Shown here one piece after another: positions 617 through 46,698 of a stretch of DNA of 63,969 nt. Under the pieces are notes generated by a model. That model did no database searches. It saw only the letters and a list, made by a program, of their open reading frames with translations, and was not told where the DNA came from. Both the position numbers and the translations under genes were made by a program. Each line of letters begins with the position of its first letter. Within the stretch, counting starts at the first letter, position 1. The DNA lies in contig CDMY01000646.1 in NCBI GenBank assembly GCA_001179505.1, positions 1-63,969 on the forward strand, read 5' to 3'. Origin of the DNA: Vitrella brassicaformis CCMP3155 (taxonomy: Eukaryota > Protista > Chromerida).

Positions 617-655
617 TGTGCTGTGCTGTGCTGTGCTGTGCTGTGCTGTGCTGTG
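617..655. repeat. (GCTGT)n microsatellite, contracted in the paralog at about 25435
   Basis: Perfect pentamer run. Confidence 0.9.
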
Positions 656-5986: not shown

Positions 5987-8915
5987 TCAGTCCGAAACAG
6001 GAGTCACCTGCGTAATGCTGATCACCTGATCCGAGCTCTTGAGCACTATCTCCTCCCTTTCTACGCCCTTTCCTGCGGCAATGAACTGACTGTCGTAGCC
6101 TTCTGCCTTCCACTTGCGGCAATCACACCCCACAGGGACGTGGCCTCCTTTGCAGGCGCTGGCATCATGGTTCTTGCACCGGCCACAATCGACGACCAGG
6201 GTCATCACCACAGGAGGGCTTTTCATCCTCTCAGCCTTACCCTGAGCGAACACCATCGCCTGCAGAAATGGCAGAAGAAGCAAATGTGTGTGTGCTGTGC
6301 ACACCCCCTTTGCCTGCCCTGCACTAACCTTGCTGTGCTCCCTCGTCACGTAGAGACCACTTACAGACATGTTGTCTTCTCCTTTGCCGACCGAAAGATC
6401 GAATCCCGTCTGACGTATCCCGTCCGCCCCTGCCTCTGTCGTCCCATGGACGACAGTCAGAGGGACAGACTTGCCCGTCAGATTGCACGCTGAGCATCGC
6501 CATCCGCGCCCCTTGCACTTGAAGCAGGGATATGTCGTTTGCGAAGAGGCGCCCTCGAATAACGCCTGCAGTACAGGGGAAAGCAAAAACCCATCATCAT
6601 CACCCTCCACTCAAACTCATCATACTTACCGGACGAAAGGGTGTTCGACCAATTAGTTGAGCACAAGGAAAAGCGGCGGCAGACGTCGAAAACGGCGAGG
6701 GCCACGCACGGCTGACCTCAATGACCTCAATCCTGTCAGCGTCAAATTCAAGGCTTCTACCGAAGAAGGCATGTCCGCTTCCTTCCTGTCGCATGCCCTC
6801 GTATCCGACAAAAAGGTCACGTTTGTCAATAAAGCCGCTACACTTGCGAAGATCACCAGGACCGTCACGGCCAAGGACGAGCTGACCGGCGCCGCCAATC
6901 AAGAGGCATGGGCATCTCCACATCGCTCCTTCCTTGGGCGCCGCCAGCACTCCACGAGCCTCTGGACGTATCCTGATTTTCTTGGGCCGCTCGTATCCAC
7001 CAGACAGCGTGAATGACCACTGCGGGGGATGCCGCATCCCATGCTGAATCCCAGCTGTGGCATCGGTTGGGACGTGGATGCTGTCGTCGATGAAGGCGCC
7101 AAATATAAGCTCCTCCTTGAAGACGGCAATCACAAGGCCTCTCGATGCCTGTGTGTCCTCCTCATTCGAAGGTGCAGCGACGACTTTGAGCTCTGCCTCT
7201 CGCGCTTCAAGGCATCGCAGGAGGTCTGCATACTTTGCCCCATCACGTGTGCTGCTGAAAGCGCAAGTACATACAAAACGATGACACACAGGTTTCAGCA
7301 CTGAATTTCTTTCTCCGACATCGGTCCTTTACCTGTATACAAGCTTGAAATTGTAGCGGTCCGTCCGACTGAAGAAGTCATGCAGAGCAGCTGTCTGACA
7401 CGCATTCAGTCTGCTCCCATCGATACTCTACGAAACATATACACACATGAAATGCGTCCTGTGTGCCTGACCACTATTTTTCTGACCAGTGGTGGGATTG
7501 GCGAGCACCCATCGATCCTGATCACCTCCACTTCGTCGGCCATAAAGTGCCGCACACCAAGAGGCAGAGCCACGCTGTTGTTCTTGTCCCACACGCCTTT
7601 GTAGCCGTCCAGTATATCCCGTGCTGAGAGGGCGCCTCGGTTGATCGACACAGTGCACCTCTCTAGCTCGCGATCTGGACTCGGCTCAAAGTCATCTTCG
7701 CAGCCCAGCGCGAACAGGCCGTCGGCAAGGACCACCTTTGCCCTCTTCCCTCCGCTGTAGGGGAAAATCTCAACCCATCCGTCTCTTCCCGCCACCCGCA
7801 AAGCGCGATGATGTTGCTCAAGCTCGATGCACGTTGGCTGGTCGAAGACTTTCCGATCCAGAATCATGACACGTTGCCGAGTCTCGTGCTGGAAGTCACG
7901 TTGTGGATCATCTGGCTCTTCCAAAGCTCCCTCCACGTGCAAGCAGATCATGTATCCGCCCTTGCGGCGGATGACGAAAAGAAGATCGCCGGCACCCCGC
8001 ACACGTCCGAGCAAGTCAGAGTACTTCCAGCCATGACGCGAAGCCCTGAAATCAAACAGAAAGAATAGACAACAAGCCCTGCCATAAAGGAAGCTGTAGT
8101 TTGTACCTGTAGAGCATTGTGAATGAGCATTGGCTGAACAGCGACGGAACGAGCAGAGAGTGGAGATCATCACACTCAGACGCACTCAAGCTGCTGCCAT
8201 CGATTCTCTGTGGACAACACAAAAGAAACACAGCAGTCAGGAATTCCGTTTGAGTTTAGAGGGGTCTCGCGTACTCTTCTCTGCTGAGACGAGGTACCCT
8301 CGTCGGTGGGGACCTGCAGGTGCAGGAATACAGAGAGAGAGAGAGCAAAGTGAGAGTGCAAAGTGAGAGAGCAAGGTGCTGATCGTTGTGCTGAGAGCAA
8401 AGTGAGGTGCATCTTCTTACGAGGACCAATCGTAGAGCCAAGAGGAGGAAGAGAATGTGGCCGGGAAGAACAGCATTTAAGCTGATCAGGACGACGGAGA
8501 CGATTCCGAGAGCCCACTCTGCTGATCGCTGCGATGTGTTGCCGTCGCCGGTATCTGCCGCGGCAAGAGCAGCTTCCAAGTAAGCTGCACTACTGCTGCT
8601 CTCATCGTCATGCTGATGACATAACATTGATACAAACATTATTTGATCTTGACACATTAGATGGGAGAATGGGCAGGTCTGCTGACCTTTGGCGTGTTAT
8701 TTGGCTGGTCATCAGCAGCGATGGAAGGAGGACACTTGGGCGACGGATGCGACAACACCTGCACACACCAGATAAGCATGTCTGCTCTCTATGTGTTTGT
8801 CTCTAGGTGTGCTCACCGCAGACGGCGGCGCATGAAACTTGGGGAACGCGTCATTCTTGGCGATCTTTGTCGGTCGCCCTCTCTCATTGGTCTGTCTGCT
8901 CGTAGACGGCGCCAT
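5987..8915 (-). CDS. TM hairpin + two TLDc domains + CxxCxGxG zinc motif + Gig2/PARP-like ADP-ribosyltransferase domain
   Basis: TLDc1: YRASRHG...HFMADEVEV. TLDc2: YSSTRDG...FDADRIEVIE. A phase-0 intron (6566-6716) joins in frame to CFKCKGRGWRCSAC, then VVHGT...GFDLS...GLYVTREHSK|AMVF...VDCGRCK...WKAEGYDS...REEIVL (H-Y-E ART pattern). Confidence 0.75.
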
Positions 8916-8940
8916 CTGAATGACGACAGAGGGGGACCGC

Positions 8941-9705
8941 TCAGCCGTCAGAAAGCTCATCCCTCCTGGCTTTCTGTCTTACGCTCATGGTTTGTCGCTC
9001 TGATGGTGTGCCGTAGGCCGGCTGGTCGCTGGCGGCGGCTGCTACCTCGCTTGTTTGGCCCTGCAGTGGCGGTCCAGGTGCAGGCTGGGTGCTGGCTGCG
9101 GCCGTCGGCTGAACCATCGAAGAGGCGAGCGAGACAATGTCATAGTCTATTGGCGGCGGCTCGGCGCCGCCTTCGATTGTCTGGTGTGCTCCTGGGGATG
9201 ATGTCACACCAGAAAGGGCGGCAGTGAGGGGAATGAGGAGGGGATGGGGGTGGGGGGGATGCATTGCGGGAGGGGGGCCCGCAGCGGCTGAAGCCGATGC
9301 GGCCACGGGAGGTGGGGGGCCGTATGCTGGGAAAGCCATCAACGGTGAAGGGAGTCCAGCAGCGGCTGACGGCTGCCAGGCCCTGAACGTGTCGCCAGCT
9401 GACTCGTCATCTCGTAGGCTTCCCCCGAAGGCCATCTGTCCGCCAGCCATGCTGTCGCCGTTGGCAGGGGCGGCAGCAGACGACTCGAATGCGGTCAGGG
9501 GGAGGAGATGGGGACGCCAACCGCTGAACGTGTCATCAGCTGACTCGTCGTCTCGTGGCCAGCCGGTACCATGTTCTTCGCCCATGGCGTCTTCAAGAGC
9601 GGCAGCAGACGACATATCTGTTGCCAGCGGGTCAGTGAGGTAGGGGAAAGGGGAGTAAGACGGCACCACCTGAATGGCAACAGGGGGGGACCGCTCAGCC
9701 GTCAC
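8941..9705 (-). CDS. Hypothetical Ala/Pro/Ser-rich protein with internal repeats
   Basis: 254-codon open frame with a repeated DDESA[DG]DTF motif. The start region duplicates 8915-8950; related pieces at 9714-9985 and 23030-23400. Confidence 0.35.
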   Translation of the reverse strand: MTAERSPPVAIQVVPSYSPFPYLTDPLATDMSSAAALEDAMGEEHGTGWPRDDESADDTFSGWRPHLLPLTAFESSAAAPANGDSMAGGQMAFGGSLRDDESAGDTFRAWQPSAAAGLPSPLMAFPAYGPPPPVAASASAAAGPPPAMHPPHPHPLLIPLTAALSGVTSSPGAHQTIEGGAEPPPIDYDIVSLASSMVQPTAAASTQPAPGPPLQGQTSEVAAAASDQPAYGTPSERQTMSVRQKARRDELSDG

Positions 9706-10344
9706 ATAGTTTATTACTCTTGGCCTTTTGTCTTACGCTCATGGTGTCTTGTTGCGACTGCTGGTGGAGAGGGCGCCGCCGTCAGTAGCCGCATCATCGT
9801 CTGGTTGGTCCTGCAGCAGTGGCAGCGGATATCCTTCCGAGGCAAAGGAGGCAGGTGGGACGCTGCCAGCGGCCGCAGCGGCAGCTGCAGCTGTAGTATA
9901 GACCCTTCTCTCACACTCATGCCATCGGCGTCGTCAGAGGCGGCAGCAGACGACATATTTGTTGCCAGCGGGCCAGTGAGGGAGGGGGAGGGGATGAAGG
10001 ACAGGCGGATGCGTCAGCAAGGCCGGTGGGGGTGAAGAGCAGGGAGCGTCTGGTACGCCAGTCTGAGGCACGGCGCCGATCCACTGATTCACAGTCGCTT
10101 CAAACTCCTCCTCGCTCTACAGGGTGCACACAACAACACACCATTGCCATTAGGCCGGGTGTATACACACACATCCGTCTCTAACCGTCATTCCATCGGG
10201 GTTGTCGGTGCCTGCTGAAGCAGCGGCAGCAGAAGCAGCAGCAGCAGCAGCAGGGGACTCACCAGCTGCTGCGGGAGGGTTCTGACCAGACAATAAAGAG
10301 GTGAGAATCTCAGACCGTGACGGATCTCTTGTTGTGCATCCCTC

Positions 10345-11620
10345 TCATTTTCTGCCCTGTTGGCACCGTCTTCTGAAGTTTGTGATCCATTTGTCGGTGG
10401 CCGGGAAGCCAAGTTCCATCGCCTTTGCCCGGATGTCTCTCGGGCGGACGGTCATTGGGTCACGGCCGGCCATCCACCGCCGCATCGGATCCTCAATCTG
10501 CGGGTACTTGGGCTGTCTGTTGCACTTCTTGTTCGGATCGATAATCTGCTTGCCGTCCTTCCTTTCCTTCTTGATGGTATGGTACCACTGCCTGAATTGC
10601 TCATACTTGAGGCCCTTCTCCTTGGCGAACTTCCGCATGCTGATCTGCTCGCCGGATTTTTGACGTGAAATGAACTCGTCCACCAGCCGCTGCCGCTTGC
10701 CGATAGTGATCTCCGGTGCCCTCTCAGTGGACAACTGCAGGACACACAAACAAAGAGAGGCTATGTGACGGGCAGTGAGTGAATGGATTGCTGGGAGGAT
10801 TCAGAGTCTTACGTCAGGGGCATCTCCCGCAGTGGGCGCCAGCTGGGGAATTTGGTAGGGCGGGTAGCCATGGTGGGGGTGAGGATACTGACTACACACA
10901 AGAGTACGATCACATCAACGAGTGGGCCTCTCTTGTTCGTTCTCTCACCTGAGGTGTCTGCTGATGCATGGAGGGGCTCGCTGTGGGGTGGCCGGGATGG
11001 TCATTGTCTCCAAAGAGGCAAGGCAGGCCATCGGCTGGCTCGTCTAGTAGGCTCACATGTCCCGATGCCTGACTCCCACCGAAGCACTCAGCGTCCCCTA
11101 CAGCCACCAGACAATCGACGGTTGCATCTTCGCCTGCACGGCAATCGGAGCGCCTTGCGTGTCCGCTTACCTGATGCGTATCCGTCGGCTGCAGGGTCAC
11201 TTCGTGATTGCGGCTCTCTGGGATGCGACTGAGTCCCCCATCCGCCAGCGGCACTCCCAGACACATAGCCGGGTGGCTGCAGCAAACACACACACACAGA
11301 GAAAGAGAGAGAGAGGTCAAGTGATGCGATCCAAGGACTGCCGAGTATGCCCACCTGATAAGAGCCGTAGTAAGGAGCTGCAGCTGCGGCAGCGCAACCA
11401 CCATCTGCCACCTGTGAGAAAAGGGTAAGGAACAGAGTCACATCAGCACCACTGACTCCATCGCTGCACACACCTGTGTGTGAGTATCATCATCGTTATG
11501 CTCCTCGGCCGATTCGGTGGCATCCGTGGCCTGGAGAGAAGCACACAGCACATCAGCCAAAGATCTGTGTGTGGCGGCACAGGACGTCACCTGTGGGTGA
11601 GATCTGAACGAGTCGTCCAT
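10345..11620 (-). CDS. CENP-B/pogo-type tandem HTH DNA-binding protein, copy A (no DDE domain)
   Basis: Spliced low-complexity N-terminus from ATG 11620 (MDDSFRSHPQ). Last exon ITIGKRQRLVDEF...KFAKEKGLKYEQFRQW...RQPKYPQIEDPMRRWM...IRAKAMELGFPATDKWITNFRRR matches the psq-like plus Tc5-type HTH pattern. Confidence 0.75.
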
Positions 11621-12056
11621 CAGAAGGCCTCCTTTCGTCTCAGATCTCGAACAGGACGCTCCCGTTTGTTTAGCTCGCAGATGCGTGAGCTCGCAGAAGC
11701 GGGGGAAACAACGCGGGAAGGAATGTGCTGGTGGTGTGCTGTGTGTGTGTGCAGATCTCTTCGTCGAGGGCAAGATCTCGGCCATGACTATCACTGTGAC
11801 TCATTCGGTGTGGTTATGGGGACGTCGTGGAGATATGCTCCTTTCTGGTGTCGTTATGGGAGGCTCCAGCTGCTATACTGTCCGCCTGTCTGTCCCGCTT
11901 CTCGTCATTTGCCCTTCCCAGTGTTCCCTTCTCAGTTTGTTTGTCGTTTCTGTTCCTTTCGTTCGTCATCGTTCCTTCCTGTGGTTGCCGGCCACATCAT
12001 CAGCGACCACCACCAAACCACTCTAGCCACCCGAAGGCACCGCTTGTCCAGTCAGT
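11621..12056. promoter_or_regulatory. Putative bidirectional promoter between divergent HTH and deaminase genes
   Basis: Short spacer between divergent start codons. A block of it (about 11750-11860) is conserved at 655-770 and 25455-25565. Confidence 0.45.
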
Positions 12057-13784
12057 ATGACGACTCCCGCTGACCGTGTGGGCGAGGTGTGTGCGACGTG
12101 TGTGGTTCCGTGTGCTGATGGCACCGGCGGCATCTGCGGCAAGCAGAATTTGGCCACGGGGGGCACATCCACCACTTCTGGGCCGCTGGCGGGAAGCAAC
12201 CGGTGGCTGGTGACGGAGGAGTACACTCGACTGCGGCTTTATGGTGAGATCGACCCCAGGGAACCGCTGAAACGGTGAGTGAGTGAGTGAAGCGAGTACG
12301 GCATCCATCCGTTGATGTTGTGTATTGATGCATCAGTTTGGTGGATGAGATGCGTCGCTTCGTGAATGACTGGAAGTCGTTCGAGGCCGCTGGAGAGATG
12401 GACCCCTTCTGGCACCGCAAGTCGAGCAAGACCGTCCTGGCAGTTGTTATGGTCGTCAACAAAAGCGGCCAGGAGATGTTCTACAGGGGCATGAACTCTG
12501 AGATTTCCCTACCCTCAGGTACCATTTGCACGAACCACTGGCAGGAAATACGTGTGGATGCCTCCGTCTCGGTGTGTGCAGGTTCCAATTGTGCGGAGCG
12601 TTCGGCCATATCGACGTGCATATCGAATTCGCTCGACGTGCGGCGCAGCGACTTCCGCGCTATCGCCGTGGCGGATCCCAAGGACGAGCTCAACCCAATC
12701 GCACCTTGTGGAGTGTGCGACGAATGGCTCCAGAAAATACAGGCAAGGACGCACACAACACACGACACAGACAGAGACGGCCGTGTGGATGCATTGGTTG
12801 ATTGATGATGTGTTCAGGAGGAGTCCCCCGGGTTTTCGATTGTGACGTTCACCACGTCCGAGTGCAACGAGATACGCGAGAGATGCCCCCGGCTCTTCCA
12901 GAAGGAGATGCCGCCCTCAGAGGCCCCGCCGCATCTCCGTGAGAACTGGGCGTGTCGGCTGTGCGCCTTCCAGTACAACCCGCCCCGCGTCGCAAGATGT
13001 CAGCAGTGCCGCGAACCTAGATTCAGATTCAGGTCACACACACGCACACACTAGAACCATTCAGATTCAAATTGACGCGACTGCTTCTAACCTGCAGACA
13101 CTAATGAATGCGTATCTGTGTGTGTGTGTGCAGGCCCAGGAATCGTAAGGAGCGCATCAGGGTGATGGGGTTGATGAAGAGCGACATCAGCGGCGTCGAG
13201 TCGGTGGAGCTCGAGCGTCAGGTGGAGGCGGGGGTGCTCCCCGAGATCGACAGCGAGAGCCTCCAACGAATACTCAACGACCTCAGGTCAGTTCAATCTC
13301 AACACAGACACGCGCGCCCCCATAACGTGCATCCCTCCCTCTCCTTGCGTGCAGGTCGCTCAAGTTCATTGAGAAGGCGTGGCCGCCCGCCTCAACGCCA
13401 CGGCACCGGGGGTCGGGATGCATGGCCTCGACGGGTGCCACCCTTCCCGTCCCGGCACCTGCGGGAGGGGCAGGCGGGGTCAGATATCGGCTGACGGCTT
13501 TGGGGAGGGATTACTTAGAGAGGACGACCGAGCTCAGCGAACTGGCAGTCGTCCCCTATGTGTGTGAGAGACAGAAGACTGCCTCTCCCTGCCCTTTGCG
13601 TGTTGCGCGTCGCCTCTTGCGTGTTGCATGTCGTATTCCCCGTGTCTTGCTGTGTCGATTCACTGGCTTCACTGCATTGCATTCCAAATATTGGTGTGTT
13701 ATGTCAGTCCCGTTGCAAATTAGCAGATGTGGTGTGGATGCGATTACAAGTCTTTTCTCTCTCGCATTCTGCACGTTTTCGTGA
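12057..13784 (+). CDS. Cytidine deaminase-like domain + RanBP2-type zinc finger + C-terminal winged helix
   Basis: Exons 12057-12274, 12337-12518, 12582-12742, 12818-13032, 13134-13286, 13355 onward splice in frame. Motifs GMNSEISLPSG|SNCAERSAI and PIAPCGVCDEWL; WACRLCAFQYNPPRVARCQQC; LQRILNDLRSLKFIE...YRLTALGRDYL. The 3' end is uncertain. Confidence 0.8.
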
Positions 13785-13799
13785 TCTTTTTTCCGATGG

Positions 13800-14230
13800 T
13801 AACCTGTGTGAGTCGTGTCTTCCTCATCACATCGTCCTGTCCATGCGATCGCTGCCGTATGTCGTGTGCCCGGGACCGTCCGCGGTATGTGTTCAGTGAG
13901 AGAGGGAGGAGTACGCGCGTGTCTCGATGATGTCTAGCGACTGACTGACTGAGTGAGGGATTGGTGACGTGTATGTGTGTGTCGTCAATGTGTGCCGTCA
14001 GAGAGGCCGATGGCGGGCAGGCGAAAGATATTGATTGTTGCGTTTTGAGCGTGTTGTGGTCGAAGAGTCAGGCCATCGTTCGATTCAGAAAGGCAGTGAA
14101 AAAGAAACAAGTACATGACAAAGTCAGAGAAGAAAGAAATATAGCAAGGCTTAAGAAAGCAAAGAAAGGAAAGAGAGTAAGAAAGAAAAGAAACGAAAAG
14201 ATCAGGTAAGAGGGATGCGAGACTCATTGC
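13800..14230 (+). repeat. Downstream flank duplicated at about 18655-19150
   Basis: Shared blocks such as CATCACATCGTCCTGTCCATGC, GAGAGAGGGAGGAGTACGCGCGTG and GAAGAGTCAGGCCATC..TCGATTCAGAAAGGCAGTGAAAAA. Confidence 0.9.
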
Positions 14231-14639
14231 GAGTTATCGGTACGAAACTGTTTGTGGTACAAGTTGATGACTGATGGTAACTTGTGTGTGCAGATGTGCG
14301 TGTGCATGCCGTGTGGGGTTGCTACCATATGCTTCTGCCTGTATGGTAGCACCACATTTGACGTGTTGATTCGTTTGATGCATTCGTGTCTACCCTGTCG
14401 ATTGACTTTGCTGATGTCAGTCCCGTTGCTGATTGACAGCAAAGGACGATGTGTGACGTGATATTTATGCACGTGATATTTATGCAATGAACGCATGAAA
14501 GCTCACTCTCAACACGTTTTCATAAGTGCAGCATTCGGTCAGCAATCAGTCAGCTATCACCCCACATACCCCATCGAGGCAGGGCGGGACATGAAGCAGA
14601 GCATACGGCAGCAAACAAAATAGGATGCGAATACATCAG

Positions 14640-15736
14640 TCACATTTTACTCACACCACAGCGAAGGCCCTGATCCAGTTGGGGCTCGCCGAGAAGCCAC
14701 TGACGCCGGACCCGGATGGCCTTCGGAGGGACGCTCATTGGATCAGCATGGTTGGCCATCCACTGCTGCATCACGTCCTCAATTTGGTGGTACTTCGGCT
14801 GTCTGTTGCGCTTCTTGTTTGTGTCGATGGCTTTCTTGCCCGGCGCCGGCTGCTTCTTCAGTTTGTGCCGCCACTGCTTGAACTGGCCAGGCTTGAGGCC
14901 CTTCTCTCGTTCGAACCGGGAAATGGTGATGCGCTCGCCGAACTTCTTCCGCCTTTCGAACTCCTCCACCAGCCGCAGCCGCTCGCCAATCGTCACCTCG
15001 CCGGCCCTCTCAGTGGGCACCTGCAAGACACACACACAAACACAGACAGCATTGGTGAGGCGACAGGCAGTGCGCGTATTTGGCAAGTGTGCATCACCTG
15101 CTGTGACGACTGGGGAGCCCTTCGTCTCGGTGAGTGCCGGAGTGGCGGGAGGGACTCTCCGCGATCTCGTGCGGACGGCTCAGGCGGCGGCCACATGACA
15201 TTGGGATGCATTTGGTAGGGCGGGAAGCCATAGTGAGTACGAGGATACTGACCACACACATGAGAGGACAATCACATCAACGAGTGGGCCTCTTTCCTTC
15301 GTTCTCTCACCTGAGGTGTCTGCTGCTGCATGGAGGGGTCGGCGATGGGGTGGCCGCTTGAATGGTGGCCTCCGCCATAGGGCAGATAAGAAACTGCCAG
15401 AGCACCGGCGTGTCGCTCCCATACATCATCTGTGGAACCACACAGTGCGTGATATCAGCCGTTCAGCTCACATGCGTGTCCATCGCGGCTCACTGTGATG
15501 CGACTGCTGAGTCATCCATTCACCAGCCGCACTCGCATCAAAATCACCTGGCACCTGCGAGGAAAGAGAAAGGAACAGATTCGCATCAGCACCACTGACT
15601 CCATCGCTGCACACACCTGTGTGTGAGTGTCATTGAAATGATGCCAGCGGTAATGATGCTCCTCGGCTCCCGTGGGATCATCATGAAATTCGCAGTCCCA
15701 CATTCCCTGTGGGCCAGATCTGCCTGAATCATCCAT
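14640..15736 (-). pseudogene. CENP-B/pogo-type HTH gene, copy C, frameshifted in the second HTH
   Basis: ATG 15736 (MDDSGRSGPQ); HTH exon paralogous to A and B. A 26-nt deletion relative to copy B near 14708-14714 moves GVSGFSASPNWIRAF out of frame. Confidence 0.6.
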
Positions 15737-16145
15737 CAGATGGCCTCCTTCAGGAAGGCCCTCCTTCCTTCGGCAGCCCTTTCAGGACAGCCTGAAGAGT
15801 CACACAGACATCAGCCAGATCAGCCAACTGGTGTGTGGCGGCAAGGCGCATCACCTGGTGGTCAGATCTGCTTGAGTCCAGTCCTCCATCACTCTCAGAA
15901 GGTGATGTGATCGTTTCTTTTTTCTGTTTTGTTTCTGAGAGGACCAGCGATTTCCTCAATGCGAGCGGTTTCACGGAGAGATTCCTCTCCAGGCTCTCTA
16001 ACCCTAACCCTACTCCTACGCCTGCTACGTCTCCTGCTCTCTCCATTCTCCACGCGGCGTCTGCCCTTGCCTCTTTGCGCTCTGCCCTTTTCCAAAGATC
16101 TCCACGAGTTTCCCTTATTCCTTCGTCGCAACGGTCCCCAACACC

Positions 16146-18286: not shown

Positions 18287-18586
18287 NNNNNNNNNNNNNN
18301 NNNNNNNNNNNNNNNNNNNNNNNNNNNNNNNNNNNNNNNNNNNNNNNNNNNNNNNNNNNNNNNNNNNNNNNNNNNNNNNNNNNNNNNNNNNNNNNNNNNN
18401 NNNNNNNNNNNNNNNNNNNNNNNNNNNNNNNNNNNNNNNNNNNNNNNNNNNNNNNNNNNNNNNNNNNNNNNNNNNNNNNNNNNNNNNNNNNNNNNNNNNN
18501 NNNNNNNNNNNNNNNNNNNNNNNNNNNNNNNNNNNNNNNNNNNNNNNNNNNNNNNNNNNNNNNNNNNNNNNNNNNNNNNNNNNNNN
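18287..18586. other. Assembly gap (300 N) followed by a G run
   Basis: Run of N. Confidence 0.99.
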
Positions 18587-18654
18587 GGGGGGGGGGGGAG
18601 GGCGGACGTGACACACCCGGACCGCCATTGATACAATGTGACTGTCTGTAATTT

Positions 18655-19150
18655 GTATGAGTCGTGTCTTTATCATTACATCTGTCGCTTTATCATTACA
18701 TCTGTCGCTTGCTTCATCACATCGTCCTGTCCATGCAATCGCTGCCTTGTGTAGCGTGGTATGTGTTCGGTGAGAGAGGGAGGAGTACGCGCGTGCCGCG
18801 ATGACGTCTAGCGACTGACTGACTGACTGAGTGACTGATTGGTGATGTGTATGTGTGCGTCGTCAATGTGTGTTGTCGTCGACTGACGGCCGCATTGGCT
18901 CACTTCACTTCAGAGAGAGGCCGATAGCGGGCAGCCCCGAGAGATATCGATCGGTACGAAACTGTGAGTGGAGTGTGGTTACGTTTTCAATCGGTGTTGC
19001 GTGCTGTGTGCCGAAGAGTCAGGCCATCTTTCGATTCAGAAAGGCAGTGAAAAACAAGGAAGTACAAAACAAAGTCAGATGAGAAAGAAATATAGAAAAG
19101 GAAGGGATGAAAGGTAGGAAGAAAAGAAGAGAAAAGATCAAGTAAAAAGA
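18655..19150 (+). repeat. Second copy of the 13800-14230 flank
   Basis: Direct visual alignment to 13800-14230. Confidence 0.9.
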
Positions 19151-20050
19151 ATGCGTGCTTGGCTGTGACCAGCACCCGATGTTCATCAACGACTCCCTGC
19201 CCAGGGATTTCTTCCTCTTATGCATTTGTGCTCTTGCTGTGGTTGGCTGTTCGTGTATCTGTTGTGGGTGCGTGCGGGTGTGCGTACGTGTGTGTGTGTG
19301 CGCATCGGACTGCATGGACACGGTAGCTCACGTAAGAGCACGCTTCATACAAACTGACGTCAGTTGCGTTCCTCTCCGTCTATTCAAGTGGCGCGAACAG
19401 CTTGCCCGGATATTGTGGTGACAATTTGAAAATGACATCACTCTCGACGAGTCACATTCATTTAGTCATGGACGCATGTCATAATACGCTCAACACACCC
19501 TGACACACACGTGGATGTACCAGATGGGGAGAGATGTGATAAGTGTGTGTGCGTGCGTCCAGCCCCCATCTGCTGCACTTCCCCAAAGTACCACAGATGT
19601 GACGCATGGATGGCAACATGATACGGACTGTACAACAGTGTACAACAGCATGAGAAATGACAGCAGACAGCGCAGACACAAAGAAGAGAAGAGAAGAGAA
19701 GATGCAGCCAATCAACCATACAACCGTAAAATCACAGTAATGCTGCGCCAATACAAACGACCTCAGCCCCAATCCGCACAACCAATAGCCCGATAGACAC
19801 AACAGCGAGCCATGGCATCAATCAATAAAAGCCACATTAAGACCAGTATGTGTGATACGGCATACATACATATATACATGCATCCATATCGGCTGGATGA
19901 ACGCAACACACACACACACCATCAAAGCATGTCATGTCGACATTTCTCACACCACAGTCAGCCTCCAGACTCGCCTCCGTTAGCCATGATGTCTCCGAAG
20001 CACAGCAGACACATTCGGCAAACAAGTGACATCATATACTCGAATTACAC

Positions 20051-22964
20051 CTACCCCGCCTTCGTTTCCCCCACCACGGCAAGCACGTCAACTTCATCAG
20101 CCATGAAGTACTTGCTACCCTCGAACACAGCACAGCCACGCTCATCCCTCACTCCTTCATAGCCCACAGGCACATGACCGCTCGGGATGCAATGACGGCA
20201 GCTGCGCATATCAGCAGCAGGGCCATAGCCGAAACCCAGCCAGCACGGCAGTCTCACACATCCATGCACATTTGAGCGTACAGCAGAGAAGAGAGAAGAC
20301 AATGCGACAGCAACGAAGAGGGGCTCGACACAGGACAGATGGTGAATTCACAAGTTTGCCACAAGTTTCACACACTTTCTTCCGAGGCAACATACAGAAA
20401 GTCACGGGAGGGCAGATGTCATAGCTTCCTGCTCACAGCAGCATAAACACGGAACACTACGCCAAACACCAACGACACACCGCCCCCTGCAAAAATACGG
20501 GCAGAACACCCAGTAGCAAAGTAAATGGCACAGACAGCTACTGCATTCCACAAGAAAATGCAAGAGAAGGCATCGACGTAGTGAGCGTCAAGCCACCGAT
20601 GCACCGGATCAAAAAAGCAGAAAAATGACATACAGCTCGCCATATCATCAGATGCCATCACTCTGAAGCAGAGTAAGGTCATGAACCCGCAGACGAGCGC
20701 TACCATCGGCCACAATACAAGCAATGTCAGTATTCCAGGCATTTCGTGTGGCTCCCACAGCCCCTCCCTAAACATCTTGACTGTCGGTATAATGCAATCA
20801 GTTAGCACCACCGCGCCTGCTATCAGCATCAGCAAGCAAAACCCCAGACGGCCCGAAAGGTGCGTCACATGTGACGAGGCTGATAACACGCCGTCCACGT
20901 GAATCACCTCCACTTCATCAGCCATTAGCACCTTACTGCCACCGAACAGAGCATTACCGCGGTCATCCCTCGGCCCCACATAGCCCTCGGGCGCATAAAA
21001 GCTGGAAATGCACTGCGAGTGTTGGCTGCGGATGAACTGCTGGCAGCTCCGCAGATCGTCCGTAGGGCCACTCCGATAGCAGCCATATCCCAACCACAGA
21101 CCCCCACACCCACCGATTCTGAGCTTTGCTCTCATTCCGAAGCCCGCTCCTTCCCTTCCGGCCACACACACTTGCTGTCTGCACTGCATCATCTTGGCCG
21201 GCTTGTCCGAGGGGCTGGGGAGGGAAAAATGCCACACAATCGTCTCGTACTTCTTCTTGCCTGTTGGAGTCTCCGGCAGCTTGATGCCATCCGCCATACA
21301 GGCCCCAAAGACATACTCGTCCTTCCTGATGACGAACACCAGGCCCTTGGCGTCGTCGACACATCGCAGCAGATCGGCGTAGCGACAGCCATCACGCGTC
21401 GCTCTGCAGTACGTGAAACAGAATGTCACATGAGGAAAGCAACAGATGGCAAACGCACCTGTAGACAAGACTTAGACTGCACTCTGTCGCCGGTCTGAGA
21501 AACTGGTGGAGTGCGCCGCATTGGAAGGGACTCAAACTGCAGCCATCGATAGCCTGCAGCCGATAGAGGTACATCAAACACATGAAAGCAACACTGATGC
21601 ACTCAGTTTTTTGCTGTGGGTGTGTGACCTTAAGCGGTGGGAGTGAGCGTCCATCAACATGAATAACCTCCAGTTCGTCAGCCGTAAGTACTTTCCAGCC
21701 AGCGAATAGAAGGAACTGTGGATCGCCCAGCTTCAAGCTGCGCTTTATACAGCAGCGGCGCATATTAGCTGCGTGGCCACGCCCACCATAACCCATAGAC
21801 AGAGACCGATTCATCAAGCCAATCATCGGCTCAGCTGTCCCCCAAGATCCTGTCCTCTTCTGCCCAGCCACACAAACGTCCTGCAACATTCGGGGGACTG
21901 GGATCTTGGTCGGTTCATCGAAGTATAGACCGGCAAGGGAGAAACACCACGAACTGCAGACGTAGTGGTTGACTCCTGCTGGATTCTCAGGCAGCTTGAT
22001 TCGGTCACTTATTCTGCCGCCGACAACACAGTCACCATCCCTGACGATGAACACCAGGCCCCTCGCATCGCCGACACACCGAAGGAAATCACTGTACAAT
22101 GGCCCGTCACGCGATGCCCTGGCAGACAAACGCACCCAAATGTCACTATCAATGTGTCCTATCAACGTGTCCCATCGTACGTCGTACCTGTAGAGCAGAG
22201 TGAATTCGCACTCGTCGTATTCGGACGGCACGACAAGAGACCGGAGGGCCGCACACTCAGCCGCACTCAGACTGCTGCCTTCGACCAGCTGGACATAGAA
22301 GGAGAGGCAAACAAGATCCGATTGCACGTGTCCATGATCGTATGCCGGTACTTGCCTGTATTGGCTCAGTCGCATCGCCATTCACTCCATCTACGGTGCT
22401 GCAGGCCGGTTGGACTGTCACGGTATCACCAGCCGCAGTCTGACAGCTGCCGACGATGGCCTGCAGGCAACACAGAACAGGCACACAGACAAAGATACGG
22501 CCACCAATTGACACTGCGTTGGCGAGTGGGTGTCGCATACGTGTGGTTGCTTGGCTGATCCTGTTTGTTGCGAGCATTGTGTATGAGGCCCCAGTCCCAG
22601 ACCGCCTTGCGGTGTTTCGTCGTCAGGCATATCAATCACGTAGTCAACATCCTGACGAGAGCGAACATAGAGAGGGACGAGATCAGGCTTATATGGCCAA
22701 CTGGTGCTCTCTCCCTTTGTGTTCTGACCTCTAGTGTGTCGGTCAGGCGCTCTTCGGCAGTGTTGGCGACGACAGACCTGGCCGACGAACGAGGTAGCTG
22801 CACGCATACACCAGACTATAAGCTGCCTGCGTGTCAGCGTGTGATCATTTCCTTAAAGGCCTCACCAGAGACGGCGGACCCTCCCGGTGGTCACGACCCT
22901 CAGGCTTGTGGATCTTGGTCGGTGGCCCTCTCTGGTTGGTCAGTCTCTCCACAAACGGCTCCAT
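20051..22964 (-). CDS. Multi-TLDc protein (two full and one partial TLDc) with an inserted multi-pass TM segment
   Basis: First exon MEPFVERLTNQRGPPTKI is paralogous to the exon at 8915. TLDc motifs YR|ASRDG...ADELEVIHV and YR|ATRDG...ADEVEVIHV; hydrophobic helices at about 20430-20850; half-domain ...FMADEVDVLAV at 20051-20270. Confidence 0.65.
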
Positions 22965-23084
22965 CTGATTGACAACAGGAACAGCTCAGATAAGCTGCTC
23001 GTTTGTCGAGAGGTGAATGGACCCTTTTAGCTTACGCTCGTGGTGTTTCGCTGAGAAGGCGACTGCTGGTCCAGCGGCCCATCG

Positions 23085-25570
23085 CCGTCATCAGCAGCCG
23101 ATTCGTCGTCTGCTTGGCCCTGCTGGGGCGGATATCCTTCCGAGGCAAAGGAGGCAGGTGGGACGCTGCTAGCGGCCGAAGCGACAGCTGCAGCTGCAGC
23201 ATGTGTATCTGGCTCCGGCTGGCCAGTGAGGGGAATGGGGAGGGGAAGGAGAGGGCCCGCAGCGGCTGACGGGCCGCCGAACGTGTCAATCAGCTGGCGG
23301 CCAGGCAATATCATACCCTTCTCTCACACTCGTGCCATCGGCGTCGTCAGGGACGGCAGCAGACGACATATGTGGCTGTGGCTGGTGAGTGAGGGTAAGG
23401 GCAAGGGGGAGATGATGGGGGTGAGGCGGACTTATTTCGGGCAAGGGTGAAGAGCAGGGAGCGTCTGGTACGCCAGTCTGAGGCACGGCGCCGATCCACT
23501 GATTCACAGTCGCTTCAAACTCCTCCTCGCTCTACAGGGTGCACACAACAACACACCATCATCGCTGGGTCTGATGAATGCGTTCATATTCGTCTCTTAC
23601 GGTCATTCCATCGGTGTTGTCGATGCCAGAAGCAGCAGCAGCAGCAGCTGCTGCTGCTGCGGGGAGCTCAGGGGCTGTGGGACGGTGCTGCCCAGACAAT
23701 AAGAGAGTGAGAATGTGAGACAATGGCGGATCTCTTGTTGTGCCTGCCTGCCTGTCATCTTTCTGACCTGTTGGAAGCGTTCTCTGAAACCCCTGACCCA
23801 GCTATCGCTCGCCGAGAAGCCACTGACGCCCAGCCGCATCTTGATCTCCATCGCTTTTTCTCTGATGTCCTTTGTGGGAACACTCATTGGGTCACGCTGC
23901 CCAGCCATCCACTGCCGCATCTCATCCTCGATCGGCTGGTACTTAGGTTGCCTGATGCGCTTCTTGTCTGCATCGGTCACTTGCACACCGACCTCCCTCT
24001 GCTTCATTAGCTTGTAGCGCCACTGCCTGAATTGGCCATACTTGATGCCGTTCTCCTTGGCGAACTGGGCCATGCTGATCCGCTCGCCGGACTGCTTCCG
24101 CCTCTCAAACTCCTCCACCAGCCGCAGCCGCTCGCCGATAGTGGTCTCCGGCGCCCTCTCAGTGGACACCTTCATGACACAGAAACAAAGAGAGGCTATG
24201 TGACGGGCAGTGCGTGAATGGAGTGGTGGGAGGAATCAGAGTCATACGTTAGGGGCATCTCCCGCAGTGGGCGCCAGCTGGGGAATTTGGTACGGCGGGA
24301 AGCCATAGTGAGTGTGAGGATACTGCGCAGACACAGAAGAGGACAATCACATCAACGAGTGTGCCTTTCTCGTTCGTTCTCTCACCTGAGGTGTCTGCTG
24401 ATGCATGGAGGGGTCGGCGATGGGGTGGCTGGCACGGTCGTCGTCTCCAAAGAGCCATTGCAGGCCGTCGAGTGGGTCGTCTGGTGGGCTGACATGTGCC
24501 AATGGCTGACTCCCACCAAAGCACTCAGCGTCCCCTACAGCCACCATGCAATCGACGGTTGCATCTTCGCCTGCACGGCAATCGGAGCGTCTTGCGTGTC
24601 CGCTCACTTGATGCGTATCCGTCGGCTGCAGGGTCACTTCCTGATTGCGGCTCTCTGGGATGCGACTGAGTCCCCCATCCACCAGCGGCACTCCCAGACA
24701 CATAGCCGGGTGGCTGCAGCCAACACACACACACGGAGAAAGAGAGAGAGAGGTCAAGTGATGCGATCCAAGGACTGCCGAGTATGCCCACCTGATAAGA
24801 GCCGTAGTAAGGAGCTGCAGCTGCGGCAGCGCAACCACCATCTGCCACCTGTGAGAAAAGGGTAAGGAACAGAGTCACATCAGCACCACTGACTCCATCG
24901 CTGCATACACCTGTGTGTGAGTGTCATCACAATTATGCTCCTCGGCCAATTCGGTGGCTCCCGCAGCCTGGAAAAAAGCACAAACAGGCACATCAGCCAG
25001 CAGCCAAAGATCTGTGTGTGTGTCGGCAAAGGACGTCACCTGTGGGTGAGATCTGAACGAGTCGTCCATCAGAAGGCCTCCTTTGGGCAGATCTCCGGAA
25101 AAGGACCTCAGATGAGGACGCCTTGGTTGGTTGGTTATTGTATTTCGAGACTCGTGTCTGTAACCCCGAGGGGATCCTGTCCAGGTCACGCACTAAACTA
25201 GCAGCATGCACATGCATAGAAGCATGCACACGGCCTGTCTCCCCATCCCACCCACCCACCCAGTCGACACGCACGTGCCACCCTATGATGGTCAGAAAAA
25301 TCGCTGTCGACACCGGTTGCCTTGTGCTCGGGGAATAGCGAAGGGAAGACCAGTTGCTCTAACTCAGATAAGCTCGCAGACCTTTGAGCTCGCACCAAAT
25401 GGCCGTCGCAGGCATGTCCTCTCTGTCTGCTGGTGTGCTGTGCTGTGTGTGTGTGCAGATCTCTTCGTCAAGGGCAAGATCTCGGCGGTGACTGTCACTG
25501 TGACTCATTCGGTGTCGTTATGGGGACGTCGTGGAGATATGCTCCTTTCTGGCGTCGTTATGGGAGGGCC
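23085..25570. repeat. Segmental duplicate of about 9780-11870 (low-complexity piece + HTH gene + promoter)
   Basis: Long near-identical blocks, e.g. 23447-23560 vs 10033-10145 and 24590-24920 vs 11150-11480. Confidence 0.95.
23603..25069 (-). CDS. CENP-B/pogo-type tandem HTH protein, copy B (no DDE domain)
   Basis: ATG 25069 (MDDSFRSHPQ). Last exon TIGERLRLVEEF...RQPKYQPIEDEMRQWM...IREKAMEIKMRLGVSGFSASDSWVRGFRERF. Confidence 0.75.
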
Positions 25571-26480
25571 GGCTTGGTATACTGCTCACGGTATTCCTAC
25601 AGCTCGTCAGGCTCTGCTGTTCCGCCGTTGTCAGCGCACCGCCATGAACGGTGAGGTATCCACGTTCACTTTCGCACGCCCCTCCCACACACACTGGCTG
25701 AGATCTGCCACTTGTGTTGATTTGCAGCCGGTCTGACTCCTGGGTGGCGAGCGTTCCTTCTACGTGGCCTTCATGACCACTGGGACGATGTCGAGCTCGA
25801 TCGCCAGCGCTCTCAGTCGCTGGCGGACCCGACGGACGTGACAGCGCCACCGAAGCATCGCCAGGTGTGGCTCACCGCGGCGAGTGCCGAGCGCATCACG
25901 GGTCAGCAGGGGTGGCAGCTGGCGCTCCTTCCGGCGGCCATCGACCAGGACGCCCGGGACCGGCCCCTCCGCCACCTGTTCCGGCTGCAGGCCTTCCGCA
26001 AACCGGATATGAACCTGACCGAGCAGTCGGCTCATCAGGACGGCCAGTGCTGCGTCCTCGTGTACTGGGGAGGGGAGCTGGTGGATGAGGTGCGTTACGT
26101 GCCGGTCGACAAGGGTTCGGATGAGAAGCTGTGTGCGACGTGTGTGGTGCCGTGTGCTGATGGCACCGGCGGCATCTGCGGCAAGCAGAACACCTTCCGC
26201 AACGTCGTCAACTCGCACCTGCGCAAGACACACAAACTGACCAACGAGGATGCGCAGGTATGTGTGTGAGGACATGTCTTCTGCGCATGGACGGCCTCGT
26301 GTATGCTGTGTTGTCCTGCGTGGTGTCTGCAGCGGCTTCTTGCCTCTCTTGGGCTATCGGCGCCGATGACTGTCACCAACACACGTACGATGCGACGCGG
26401 TGCGGGGGATGGACTGAATGTGCTGTCTGTCCATCCACCGTGTCTGTCTTTCTGCAGATGTGTACCACCACCATGGGTCG
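25117..26480 (+). repeat. Segmental duplicate of about 297-1680 (promoter + BED gene 5' exons)
   Basis: Direct alignment with scattered substitutions. Confidence 0.95.
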
Positions 26481-27098
26481 CTGCAAGGTCAGGGAGCAGC
26501 CGACGAATATGCAGCAGGTGAGTGGGCAGAGATGCCTGCATGGGCAAGGGTGTAATGGTCGACTGTGTGCCTGCTATAGGTGACGCTGGGTGGTCCGGTG
26601 TGAGTCATCCACCAATGGCTGCGGGCCAGCCGATTATATTTGCCGGCTCGGTGATCTATCAGTCCAGCCACGTCCCCGCTGCTGAGACACCGACCACCGA
26701 CGACGAGAGCGCACCGTGAGTCAGCACATACAACAGCGTGCACATGGCATATGGCAGTTTGTGTATGTGTGTATGCAGGCCACCACTGGGTCTTCTGCGG
26801 GTCGACGACATGGATATGGCGCCTTCCAACAGTGACCTCAACGGAGGCATCGCTCCCTCCTATTTGCAAGGCCATGAGACGCTCCTCGGCCATGAAGTTG
26901 GGGGTTTGATGCAACAGGTGGGACATGACGGACGACACATTCGTGACAGACACGGCGCTGACAACGTCCGTGTGTCTGTTTTCTGTCTGTCGGGATGGAG
27001 ACTTTGAGGATCACAGCAAGTGGCCTGCCGATGAATGGGCCGACAGCCTGATTGGCACCCTGCTGGATCCTGATGGTGCTCTCATGCACCAGTACTGA
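25644..27098 (+). CDS. BED-like zinc-finger protein, copy 2 (open frame)
   Basis: MN|AGLTPGWRAFLLRG...CATCVVPCADGTGGICGKQNTFRNVVNSHLRKTH, then short exons to ...DEWADSLIGTLLDPDGALMHQY*. The 3' exons are unrelated to those of copy 1. Confidence 0.6.
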
Positions 27099-46690: not shown

Positions 46691-46698
46691 CCCCTCTG

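What the first reader, a model, noticed from the sequence alone, without database searches (positions are those of the whole stretch)
5987..27098. Tandem cassette array: conserved HTH gene head-to-head with interchangeable nucleic-acid/NAD-acting effector genes
Seen: three paralogous HTH genes (ATG 11620, 15736, 25069) each face a plus-strand gene 400-580 bp away, and the partners are unrelated: a deaminase, a CCCH-KH-NYN RNase and a BED-finger gene. Two units continue leftward into TLDc genes with homologous first exons but different C-termini (ART vs TM). A fourth copy of the promoter block at 297-850 pairs with a BED gene and a non-HTH left side. Known: ART, deaminase and PIN/NYN nuclease domains are recurrent effectors in antiviral and anti-transposon defence. 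Inference: a mix-and-match, co-regulated defence or conflict locus in a chromerid, with fixed regulator and promoter modules and polymorphic effectors.
Basis: partly seen in the sequence, partly recalled or inferred. Interest (0 to 1): 0.85.

Follow-up and report, generated by a model that had tools for sequence, protein, structure and literature searches.

The report
Mosaic duplicated HTH-TLDc gene cluster
This stretch of the alga Vitrella brassicaformis holds three diverged copies of a lineage-specific DNA-binding (CENP-B/pogo-type HTH, usually TLDc-fused) gene whose differing head-to-head neighbours are best explained by patchwork segmental duplication, not by a dedicated swap-in defence cassette system.

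Summary
The repeats are real. Three HTH paralogs start at minus-strand ATGs 11620, 15736 and 25069, and each faces a plus-strand gene about 410-650 bp away. The deaminase (Pfam 7e-26, intact CAE and PCxxC motifs) and the CCCH finger are confirmed. NYN and ART are language-model leads only. KH and BED are not confirmed.

- The HTH is the N-terminal module of a Vitrella-only family with at least 33 loci. It is annotated as fused to two TLDc domains in unit C and in at least 8 paralogs.
- The only recurrent head-to-head partner is a small zinc-finger gene family (6 of 33 loci).
- Other loci face CTP synthase, a TLDc gene or unrecognisable genes; at one, GH81 is the only gene recognised upstream.
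- The "promoter block" has 4 genomic copies, always beside the finger gene, and unit B lacks it. Next to it lies a 200-bp dispersed repeat with at least 40 copies.
- The deaminase gene starts with an in-frame relic of the finger gene. Its paralog on C282 has no HTH or finger-gene homology in the 1.3 kb upstream that was fetched.
- The HTH/CCCH-NYN pair is duplicated on C260.
- RNA contigs cover HTH2 but not HTH1 or the deaminase.

The assembly gap hides the NYN gene's last intron and exon. Another follow-up in this scan reached a similar verdict on a different Vitrella piece.

The parts
304..500 (.). Unit 0: copy of a ~200-bp dispersed repeat. The left edge of unit 0's homology to unit C (296) lies 8 nt before it.
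   Evidence: window 25123-25320 has at least 40 genomic copies at 84-98% identity. 296-613 is 97% identical to unit C.
632..790 (+).
   Evidence: there are 4 copies in the genome (window 632, 11726, 25428 and C260:143002), at 90-92% identity.
927..1472 (+). Unit 0: first exon of the finger-family gene, with an in-frame TAG at 1119-1121.
   Evidence: An RNA contig with the unit-0 variant of the finger was seen in run X1.
5990..8185 (-). Unit A: TLDc-TLDc open frames followed by a C-terminal PARP-like ART exon (5990-6610).
   Evidence: Pfam TLD is weak here (0.03-0.07). tblastn to the TLDc part of P0005 gives 4e-20. The ART call rests on a language-model lead of 0.88 and H/Y/E-like motifs read by eye.
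8944..9732 (-). Unit A: 263-codon open low-complexity frame, homologous to the linker between HTH and TLDc in the unit C gene model.
   Evidence: also 84% identical to C260:129040-129537.
10191..11620 (-). HTH1 gene (annotated CEM27912.1, 311 aa). It stands alone because the donor used in HTH3 is GG here (10352-10362); a donor 11 nt upstream shifts the frame to a stop at 10191.
   Evidence: No RNA contig lies on it.
11726..11880 (+). Unit A: copy of the block.
12057..13784 (+). Chimeric deaminase gene. It runs from ATG 12057 through the finger relic (12085-12148), in frame into the first deaminase-homologous exon (12168-12287), then the CDA exon (12329-12802, CAE and PCxxC motifs).
   Evidence: The body 12177-13538 is paralogous to C282:100794-102938 (72-78%). 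No RNA contig covers 12400-12599 or 12800-13399.
13824..14219 (.). Non-coding conserved element, transcribed, most likely part of the HTH2 3' UTR.
   Evidence: The MMETSP transcript is 2582 nt for a 276-aa ORF.
14643..15736 (-). HTH2 coding region (276 aa from ATG 15736; annotated CEM27935.1 starts 11 codons later). Introns at 15018-15094 and 15552-15613 (each cut may lie 3 nt further right), 15248-15310 and 15430-15493. A 26-nt deletion truncates the Tc5 HTH.
   Evidence: RNA joints in two runs, local spliced translation, alignment A1, MMETSP transcript.
16146..18286 (+). CCCH and NYN-like gene. The CCCH exon is 16244-16735 and the NYN-like exon is 17662-18279, which ends at a GTGAGT donor. 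KH is not confirmed.
   Evidence: It is 90.8% identical over 2.1 kb to C260:124758-126796.
18287..18586 (.). Assembly gap. It hides the last intron and the ~20-codon last exon of the NYN gene.
18714..19155 (.). Second copy of the non-coding element (67% identical to 13824-14219).
20422..25069 (-). Unit C: HTH3-linker-TLDc-TLDc gene (annotated CEM27972.1, 915 aa, 25069 to about 20932). The open frame continues to 20422 through a conserved TLDc end motif into hydrophobic segments.
25123..25320 (.). Unit C: dispersed ~200-bp repeat inserted 54 bp upstream of the HTH3 ATG. It is absent from unit A.
25428..25584 (+). Unit C: copy of the block.
25721..27326 (+). Unit C: finger-family gene. The first-exon frame is 25721-26266, with no ATG at the annotated start position and an internal Met homologous to the start of P0004. 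Homology to the C260 copy runs to 27326.

Best explanation
The region is a young, mosaic cluster of segmental duplications built around members of a Vitrella-specific gene family.

The family's N-terminus is a CENP-B/pogo-type DNA-binding module (psq-like plus Tc5 HTH) that has lost the transposase. Its C-terminus is usually two TLDc domains plus a variable tail.

The ancestral local units appear to be these:
- HTH(-TLDc) head-to-head with a small zinc-finger gene.
- HTH-TLDc head-to-head with a CCCH/NYN-like gene.
- A deaminase gene tail-to-tail with an HTH(-TLDc) gene.

Duplication, deletion and recombination or gene conversion between the repeated HTH sequences and a dispersed 200-bp repeat then joined these units with different breakpoints.
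- Unit C keeps the HTH-TLDc and finger-gene pair.
- Unit A lost the splice donor linking HTH1 to its TLDc-ART part. Its finger gene was cut inside the finger and now reads in frame into a deaminase gene.
- Unit B is an HTH copy truncated by a frameshift, without TLDc, and it is the only copy shown to be expressed.

Shown: the duplication structure, the breakpoints, the domain content, the family distribution and HTH2 splicing.

Inferred: that recombination between repeats made the junctions; that the HTH proteins bind DNA; and that head-to-head pairs share promoters.

Under this reading the variety of partners is a by-product of rearrangement in a fast-evolving paralog cluster. It is not the output of a cassette-exchange or regulator-effector design.
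For: - Diverged repeats with different end-points.
- Intron positions and intron sequence are shared by the three HTH genes and the C260 copy only, with patches at 85-91% identity beside exons at 71-77%.
- The HTH family has at least 33 strong six-frame loci, in clusters on C268, C908, C718, C260 and C646.
- All 17 representatives with E<1e-30 that were looked up are Vitrella 'HTH CENPB-type' proteins. The nearest outsiders are animal pogo-like proteins at 24-28% identity.
- The annotated proteins carry no DDE domain, and the genome has only one DDE_1 locus.
- TLDc lies downstream on the same strand at 13 of 33 loci and is annotated in the same protein in at least 9 models.
- The finger family lies head-to-head at 6 of 33 loci despite 58-71% protein identity between copies.
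- The block has 4 copies, always with the finger gene.
- The finger relic is in frame with the deaminase exon. The deaminase paralog on C282 lacks the relic and lies tail-to-tail with a TLDc-HTH gene.
- C260:122-131.5 kb is an inverted paralog carrying the HTH/CCCH-NYN pair.
- The left end of unit 0 coincides with a dispersed repeat.
- dN/dS is 0.2-0.6 for all paralog pairs, with no overall sign of positive selection.
- Other HTH loci face CTP synthase or a TLDc gene; at C887 the nearest recognised divergent-strand gene, about 4.7 kb upstream, is GH81. No recurrent family appears in 15 upstream regions.
Against: - Two units (window unit A versus C260) have homologous flanks, an HTH on one side and the non-coding element plus a truncated HTH on the other, around non-homologous genes (deaminase versus CCCH-NYN). 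That does look cassette-like.
- Two of the three deaminase loci in the genome lie within 10 kb of HTH-TLDc genes.
- Another piece of this genome is reported to have ART-like genes head-to-head with HTH/TLDc genes (earlier finding s1-242729, not tested here).
- So nucleic-acid- or NAD-acting enzymes do recur near this family.
- My survey of partners used crude open frames and Pfam only, and most partner ORFs were unrecognisable.
- The single-gene status of HTH-TLDc rests on annotation, not on reads I could lay.
Confidence: 0.68

Rival explanations
1. One reading: a co-regulated defence or conflict locus. A conserved HTH regulator and promoter module is paired with interchangeable effector genes (deaminase, RNase, finger gene), and TLDc genes carry polymorphic C-termini.
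For: - The deaminase has intact catalytic motifs.
- NYN-like and PARP-like leads exist.
- Flanks are homologous around different genes in unit A versus C260.
- 2 of 3 deaminase loci lie near HTH-TLDc genes.
- The family is lineage-specific, expanded and architecturally variable.
- Silence of HTH1 and the deaminase in standard-culture RNA is compatible with inducible genes.
Against: - The block is not a general module: it has 4 copies, is tied to the finger gene and is absent from unit B.
- The commonest partner is a non-enzymatic finger gene.
- Housekeeping partners exist, with CTP synthase head-to-head and GH81 about 4.7 kb upstream.
- No partner family recurs in 15 further loci.
- The HTH/partner pairs that recur were inherited by duplication.
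- HTH2, the only copy shown expressed, has a broken second HTH.
- dN/dS is below 1.
Confidence: 0.17
2. The HTH/finger unit is, or recently was, a mobile element: a composite DNA transposon relic with pogo-type and BED-like DNA-binding genes. It copied itself around the genome and captured neighbouring genes.
For: - Both domain types are typical of transposases.
- The nearest outside relatives of the HTH are pogo-like transposon proteins.
- The unit occurs at 6 or more loci.
- The finger gene plus block was copied without the HTH to unit 0 and C260:143 kb.
Against: - No DDE or hAT catalytic domain is present in any family protein, and there is a single DDE_1 locus in 72.7 Mb.
- Copies are 45-70% identical at protein level, with conserved introns and host-domain fusions, unlike an active transposon family.
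- No Pfam BED match was found.
- No terminal repeats were found at the one boundary examined.
Confidence: 0.08
3. The repeats are largely assembly artefacts, such as mis-scaffolded or uncollapsed copies.
For: A 412-bp stretch (17875-18286) is 100% identical to C260:123313-123724, and both abut N gaps. Short-read contigs of public DNA runs break inside the repeats, and none bridges the finger-relic/deaminase junction with 31 or more letters on both sides.
Against: The copies differ by 8-30%, with indels and different neighbours. DNA contigs from two further studies reproduce 9800-15799 piecewise with 0 differences, including single contigs across 12119-13216 and 13188-14994. An independent MMETSP transcript matches HTH2.
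Confidence: 0.05

Closest known systems
CENP-B / pogo-derived (Tigger-like) domesticated DNA-binding proteins (CENP-B, JRK, TIGD, fission-yeast Abp1/Cbh)
   Same: An N-terminal psq-like plus Tc5-type HTH module. UniProt names the family members 'HTH CENPB-type'. The nearest outside relatives are pogo-like proteins.
   Different: No DDE-derived domain remains. The module is fused to TLDc, alpha-kinase, SH3, RING or OHA domains. The family is expanded to at least 33 loci in one alga.
TLDc proteins (OXR1, NCOA7, TBC1D24 and similar)
   Same: Pfam TLD domains are present. Some paralogs are automatically named 'Oxidation resistance protein 1'.
   Different: Here there are two tandem TLDc domains behind a DNA-binding N-terminus, with ART-like or hydrophobic tails. 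TLDc has at least 130 six-frame matches in this genome.
LmjF365940-type CDA-like deaminases (Pfam PF14421)
   Same: A strong profile match, plus CAE and PCxxC zinc-binding motifs.
   Different: The 5' end is chimeric, made from a zinc-finger gene relic. There are only 3 loci in the genome. Substrate is unknown.
Bacterial polymorphic-toxin / Rhs-CDI cassette arrays and defence islands
   Same: Conserved parts sit next to non-homologous enzyme genes, with truncated 'orphan' copies nearby.
   Different: These are nuclear, intron-bearing genes. There is no immunity gene, no fixed recombination site and no enrichment of effectors at other family loci. The pairings are inherited by segmental duplication.
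Regnase-1 (ZC3H12A) / N4BP1 / MARF1-type RNases
   Same: A CCCH finger is combined with a putative NYN/PIN-like nuclease domain in one gene.
   Different: No Pfam NYN or Zc3h12a match and no KH match were found. The domain order is CCCH first. The 3' end is hidden by the gap.

Membership tests
HTH_Tnp_Tc5 / CENP-B-type HTH (PF03221) | Profile match above the Pfam gathering score | tested here: met
   The HTH3 exon scores 29.0 bits against a cut-off of 22.2. P0005 scores 25.1, and paralogs score up to 49 bits. The HTH1 exon scores 20.5 bits, just below cut-off. HTH2 has no match because a 26-nt deletion shifts the frame.
pogo/Tc5 transposase | DDE_1 catalytic domain after the HTH | tested here: not met
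   None of 20 family proteins has a DDE_1 match. The genome has a single DDE_1 locus, at C458:4113-4610.
TLDc (PF07534) | Profile match above the gathering score | tested here: met
   Unit C exon 20422-21471 scores 28 bits and P0005 scores 55 bits, against a cut-off of 24.5. Unit A exons score only 13-15 bits but are homologous to the TLDc part of P0005 (4e-20).
LmjF365940-deam (PF14421), CDA fold | Profile match, plus the [H/C]AE and PCxxC zinc-binding motifs | tested here: met
   91.7 bits against a cut-off of 27.1. CAE and PCGVC are read in frame 12329-12802.
zf-CCCH (PF00642) | Profile match above the gathering score | tested here: met
   33.7 bits against a cut-off of 20.5 at 16244-16735.
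NYN (PF01936) or RNase_Zc3h12a | Profile match and conserved acidic residues | tested here: inconclusive
   No Pfam hit at E<=0.1, and the six-frame PF01936 search does not touch the window. The language-model search returns only NYN clusters, at 0.89. IID, ADIAIAD and TSDGSY motifs are read by eye. The domain's end lies in the gap.
KH domain | Profile match | tested here: not met
   No Pfam hit for 16911-17264 or 17385-17816.
zf-BED (PF02892) | Profile match | tested here: not met
   No Pfam hit for the window exons or for annotated paralogs P0001-P0004. These carry a precomputed PF26910, which is not in the local library. A CxxC...HxxxxH pattern is read by eye.
PARP-like ADP-ribosyltransferase | Profile match and H-Y-E triad | tested here: inconclusive
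   No Pfam or PDB sequence hit. The language-model search returns PARP/ART clusters at 0.88, with all ten best hits in one clan. HGT, LYV and EEI motifs are read by eye.
Cassette-type defence / conflict locus | The same regulator and promoter module is paired with varied effector genes at many loci, beyond what common descent of whole units gives | tested here: not met
   The block has 4 copies and is tied to the finger gene. Partners at other loci include CTP synthase, a TLDc gene and unknown ORFs, with GH81 nearest at one. No family recurs in 15 regions. Recurring pairs are duplicates.
Cassette-type defence / conflict locus | Co-expression or induction of the pairs | tested here: inconclusive
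   Only transcript contigs of two runs could be laid on 9800-15799. HTH2 is covered; HTH1 and the deaminase body are not.
Conserved bidirectional gene pair (HTH and finger gene) | Head-to-head arrangement kept across diverged copies | tested here: met
   6 of 33 HTH loci have a finger-family exon on the opposite strand 0.5-1.5 kb upstream. Finger copies are 58-71% identical, and HTH copies 54-60%.

The most novel reading that the evidence does not exclude
Vitrella has evolved a lineage-specific conflict or immune-like gene system. In it, DNA-binding CENP-B-type HTH modules are fused to tandem TLDc domains and variable enzymatic or membrane tails. The genes sit in rapidly rearranging clusters that recruit nucleic-acid- and NAD-modifying enzymes (deaminase, NYN RNase, ART) as neighbours under shared bidirectional control. 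This would be a eukaryotic analogue of defence islands.
Probability: 0.13. Interest if true: 0.75.

Novelty: new variant of a known kind. Interest (0 to 1): 0.4.

Why it matters
Neither of my two literature searches pairing TLDc with Vitrella or with chromerids found a paper, and no paper seen describes the family. It is a domesticated transposase DNA-binding module fused to TLDc domains, with at least 33 loci, sitting within a TLDc expansion of at least 130 matches.

The locus also gives a clean example of how segmental duplication with breakpoints inside genes creates chimeric genes, here a finger relic reading in frame into a deaminase, and how it splits fusion genes.

It serves as a caution too. 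Repeated 'regulator plus different enzyme' geometry in a eukaryotic paralog cluster can be inherited rearrangement rather than a designed defence system.

If the family does prove to act in genome or virus conflict, it would be a new eukaryotic system. That remains untested.

Tried and rejected
- AlphaFold2 of the finger-family domain, from a 5-sequence alignment, gave pLDDT 43. That is unusable, so no fold search was made.
- PDB sequence searches with the ART and NYN exons gave nothing.
- The look-up of encoding contigs does not serve the window's own genome, so the official neighbour gene models could not be listed.
- PF26910 is not in the local Pfam copy.
Smaller stretches were used instead.
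- A home-made codon-usage score did not separate coding from non-coding frames. The partner survey therefore relied on the longest divergent frames plus Pfam and BLAST, which is crude.
- The 200-bp dispersed repeat has no terminal inverted repeat and no unusual hairpin, so calling it a MITE was rejected.
- An idea that scaffold ends are enriched for the family was dropped. With 1064 scaffolds, most of the genome lies within 25 kb of an end.
- An idea that conserved HTH introns encode small RNAs was not pursued. The conservation is limited to the four closest copies and fits gene conversion.
- Four literature searches (Vitrella or chromerid with TLDc, Vitrella with transposase or domain expansion, and TLDc with ART, deaminase and conflict) found nothing relevant.
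- Spliced (joined) protein models were not sent to any search tool. Exons were searched separately by reference. The only joined translation, for HTH2, was computed locally.

Full report
**Origin and setting.** The window is G000:C646:1-63969, from a 72.7-Mb genome in 1064 scaffolds. Proteins encoded here and by the paralogs are deposited as Vitrella brassicaformis CCMP3155.

**Are the repeats real?**

Self-comparison shows diverged direct repeats:
- 9902-11657 ~ 23315-25106 (83%)
- 10428-10994 ~ 14711-15356 (71-86%)
- 296-1682 ~ 25116-26473 (92%)
- a 155-bp block at 632-790, 11726-11880 and 25428-25584 (90-91%)
- a 64-nt stretch at 1333, 12085 and 26127 (95-97%)
- a non-coding element at 13824-14219 ~ 18714-19155 (67%)

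The copies differ by 8-30%, with indels, so they are paralogs and not duplicated assembly. Contigs of DNA runs from two further studies reproduce 9800-15799 in pieces without differences. They break inside the repeats.

**The three HTH genes.**

- Minus-strand ATGs lie exactly at 11620, 15736 and 25069, with conserved MDDS starts.
- The large exon matches HTH_Tnp_Tc5 at 1e-6 for HTH3 and 4.6e-4 for HTH1.
- Transcript contigs of two runs give the HTH2 structure. There are four GT-AG introns of 62-77 nt and a last exon from 15017 down to at least 14503. RNA cover continues to 13493.
- An MMETSP transcript of 2582 nt carries the complete 276-aa ORF from ATG 15736.
- The alignment of the three genes shows the same intron positions.
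- HTH2 has a 26-nt deletion in the Tc5 helix-turn-helix that shifts the frame to an early stop.
- HTH1 (annotated, 311 aa) has GG where HTH3 has the GT donor (10352-10362 vs 23763-23773). The model uses a donor 11 nt upstream, which shifts the next exon's frame to a stop at 10191.
- HTH3 is annotated as one 915-aa gene that continues through a low-complexity linker into two TLDc domains, from 25069 to about 20932.
- The 263-codon open frame 8944-9732 in unit A is homologous to that linker.

It recurs in at least 9 paralog models.

**The family.**

- The HTH exon has at least 33 strong six-frame matches, clustered on C268, C908, C718, C260, C238 and C646.
- An exhaustive profile-free search finds 17 representatives below 1e-30. 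All that were looked up are Vitrella 'HTH CENPB-type' proteins. The next relatives are animal pogo-like proteins at 24-28% identity.
- None has a DDE domain, and the genome has a single DDE_1 locus.
- C-terminal parts vary within the same polypeptide: two TLDc (most), alpha-kinase, SH3, RING plus SH3, OHA plus DUF7602, or nothing.
- TLDc itself has at least 130 six-frame matches. It lies downstream on the same strand at 13 of 33 HTH loci.

**The partners.**

It belongs to a Vitrella family of 247-296-aa proteins ending in a CxxC...HxxxxH finger, with about 17-19 loci. It is the only recurrent head-to-head partner, present at 6 of 33 HTH loci although the copies are only 58-71% identical.

The 155-bp block has 4 copies in the whole genome, and every one is upstream of a finger gene or its relic. 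Two of those (unit 0 and C260:143002) have no HTH beside them. Unit B has no block. The block therefore belongs to the finger gene and is not a shared regulator module.

Between the HTH3 ATG and the block lies a 200-bp dispersed repeat (25123-25320) with at least 40 copies at 84-98% identity. It is present in unit 0 and absent from unit A. Unit 0's homology begins 8 nt before it.

*The deaminase.* The CDA exon matches LmjF365940-deam at 7e-26 and keeps the CAE and PCxxC motifs. The ORF from ATG 12057 first reads the 64-nt finger relic, then continues in the same frame into an exon conserved with the paralog on C282.

That paralog (C282:100794-102938, 72-78%) has no relic. It lies tail-to-tail with a TLDc-TLDc-HTH gene, just as the window's deaminase lies tail-to-tail with HTH2. 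The head-to-head position opposite HTH1 is therefore secondary, created by a breakpoint inside a finger gene. There are only 3 deaminase loci in the genome. No RNA contig covers the deaminase body or HTH1.

*CCCH and NYN.* CCCH is confirmed (3e-8). NYN is a language-model lead (0.89) supported by motifs read by eye. KH is not confirmed. The whole gene and its HTH neighbour are duplicated, inverted, at C260:124758-128656. The gene is 90.8% identical and the HTH is 81-83% identical. There the HTH still has TLDc downstream.

*Other loci.* In 15 upstream regions of 6.5 kb there is no homolog of any window partner and no family shared between loci. Recognisable genes on the divergent strand are GH81 (C887, about 4.7 kb upstream of the HTH exon), CTP synthase (C908:144718, head-to-head) and a TLDc gene (C268:121745). 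The caveat is that my ORF picking was crude.

**The gap.**

- The NYN frame ends at 18279 in a GTGAGT donor.
- The C260 copy continues with a ~75-nt intron and a ~20-codon last exon with a fitting NYN end motif. The window's gap therefore hides the gene's 3' end.
- The distance from the NYN exon to the non-coding element is 438 bp (including 300 N) against 451 bp on C260. This supports collinearity and the estimated gap length.
- One warning remains. Window 17875-18286 is 100% identical to C260:123313-123724, and both stretches abut N gaps, so one of them may be misplaced.
- The C260 NYN copy is frameshifted.

**Selection.** Pairwise dN/dS of the HTH, finger, CCCH, NYN and deaminase exons is 0.2-0.6. 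That indicates relaxed purifying selection, with no overall sign of diversifying selection. Intron-containing patches are more alike (85-91%) than the HTH exon (71-77%) among the four closest copies only. This fits gene conversion.

**Verdict.**

One comparison does look cassette-like: unit A versus C260 has homologous flanks around different genes. Even so, every recurring pairing I could trace was inherited by duplication. The supposed promoter module is the finger gene's own upstream region plus a dispersed repeat. The family's variable 'effector' parts sit mainly in cis. Expression does not couple HTH1 with the deaminase. Partners elsewhere include housekeeping genes.

An earlier follow-up in this scan, on another Vitrella piece (s1-242729), reached the same kind of conclusion for ART-like genes beside HTH/TLDc genes. 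I did not test that locus.

I therefore read the region as a fast-rearranging paralog cluster of a new HTH-TLDc family (confidence about 0.7). About 0.15-0.2 remains for a true conflict-system role.

Noticed in passing
window 25123-25320; 304-500; 62881-62999 (inverted): A dispersed repeat of about 200 bp with at least 40 genomic copies (133 candidates) at 84-98% identity. It has no terminal inverted repeats and is unclassified.
   Followed up: partly
window 17875-18286 and L031 (C260:123313-123724): A 412-bp stretch is 100% identical between two scaffolds, and both copies abut a 300-N gap. One of them may be a misplaced contig end.
   Followed up: partly
whole genome: The TLDc domain is greatly expanded in Vitrella. 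There are at least 130 six-frame matches (235 candidates), often in tandem arrays on C242, C802, C326, C217 and C268.
   Followed up: no
window 15545-15644 and 15210-15354, with their copies in units A and C and on C260: Two 62-63-nt introns and their exon edges are 85-91% identical among the four closest HTH copies. The neighbouring coding sequence is much more diverged. This is probably gene conversion.
   Followed up: partly
window 20422-20931 (minus strand): The annotated 915-aa model leaves the open frame at about 20932. The frame itself continues through a conserved TLDc end motif into several hydrophobic segments, so the deposited model's C-terminus may be wrong.
   Followed up: no
window 39176-49047 and 56148-63242: Further diverged segmental duplications lie elsewhere in the window: 39176-39413 ~ 45720-45955, 44812-45100 ~ 48277-48573, 58783-59490 ~ 61780-62471 and 56148-56398 ~ 63002-63242. 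Three more N gaps lie at 41371, 42597 and 46699.
   Followed up: no
L031 (C260:124758-125400): The C260 copy of the NYN exon is split over two frames, by a frameshift or a sequencing error, unlike the window copy.
   Followed up: partly
G000:C458:4113-4610: This is the only DDE_1 (pogo-type transposase core) match in the genome. It may be the last relic of the element family that donated the HTH module.
   Followed up: no
L051 (C908:146447-147900): A CTP synthase gene lies head-to-head with an HTH-TLDc family gene (C908:144718).
   Followed up: partly
window 1119-1121: The unit 0 finger gene has an in-frame TAG where unit C has TGG. Even so, an RNA contig with the unit-0 variant of the finger was seen.
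   Followed up: partly
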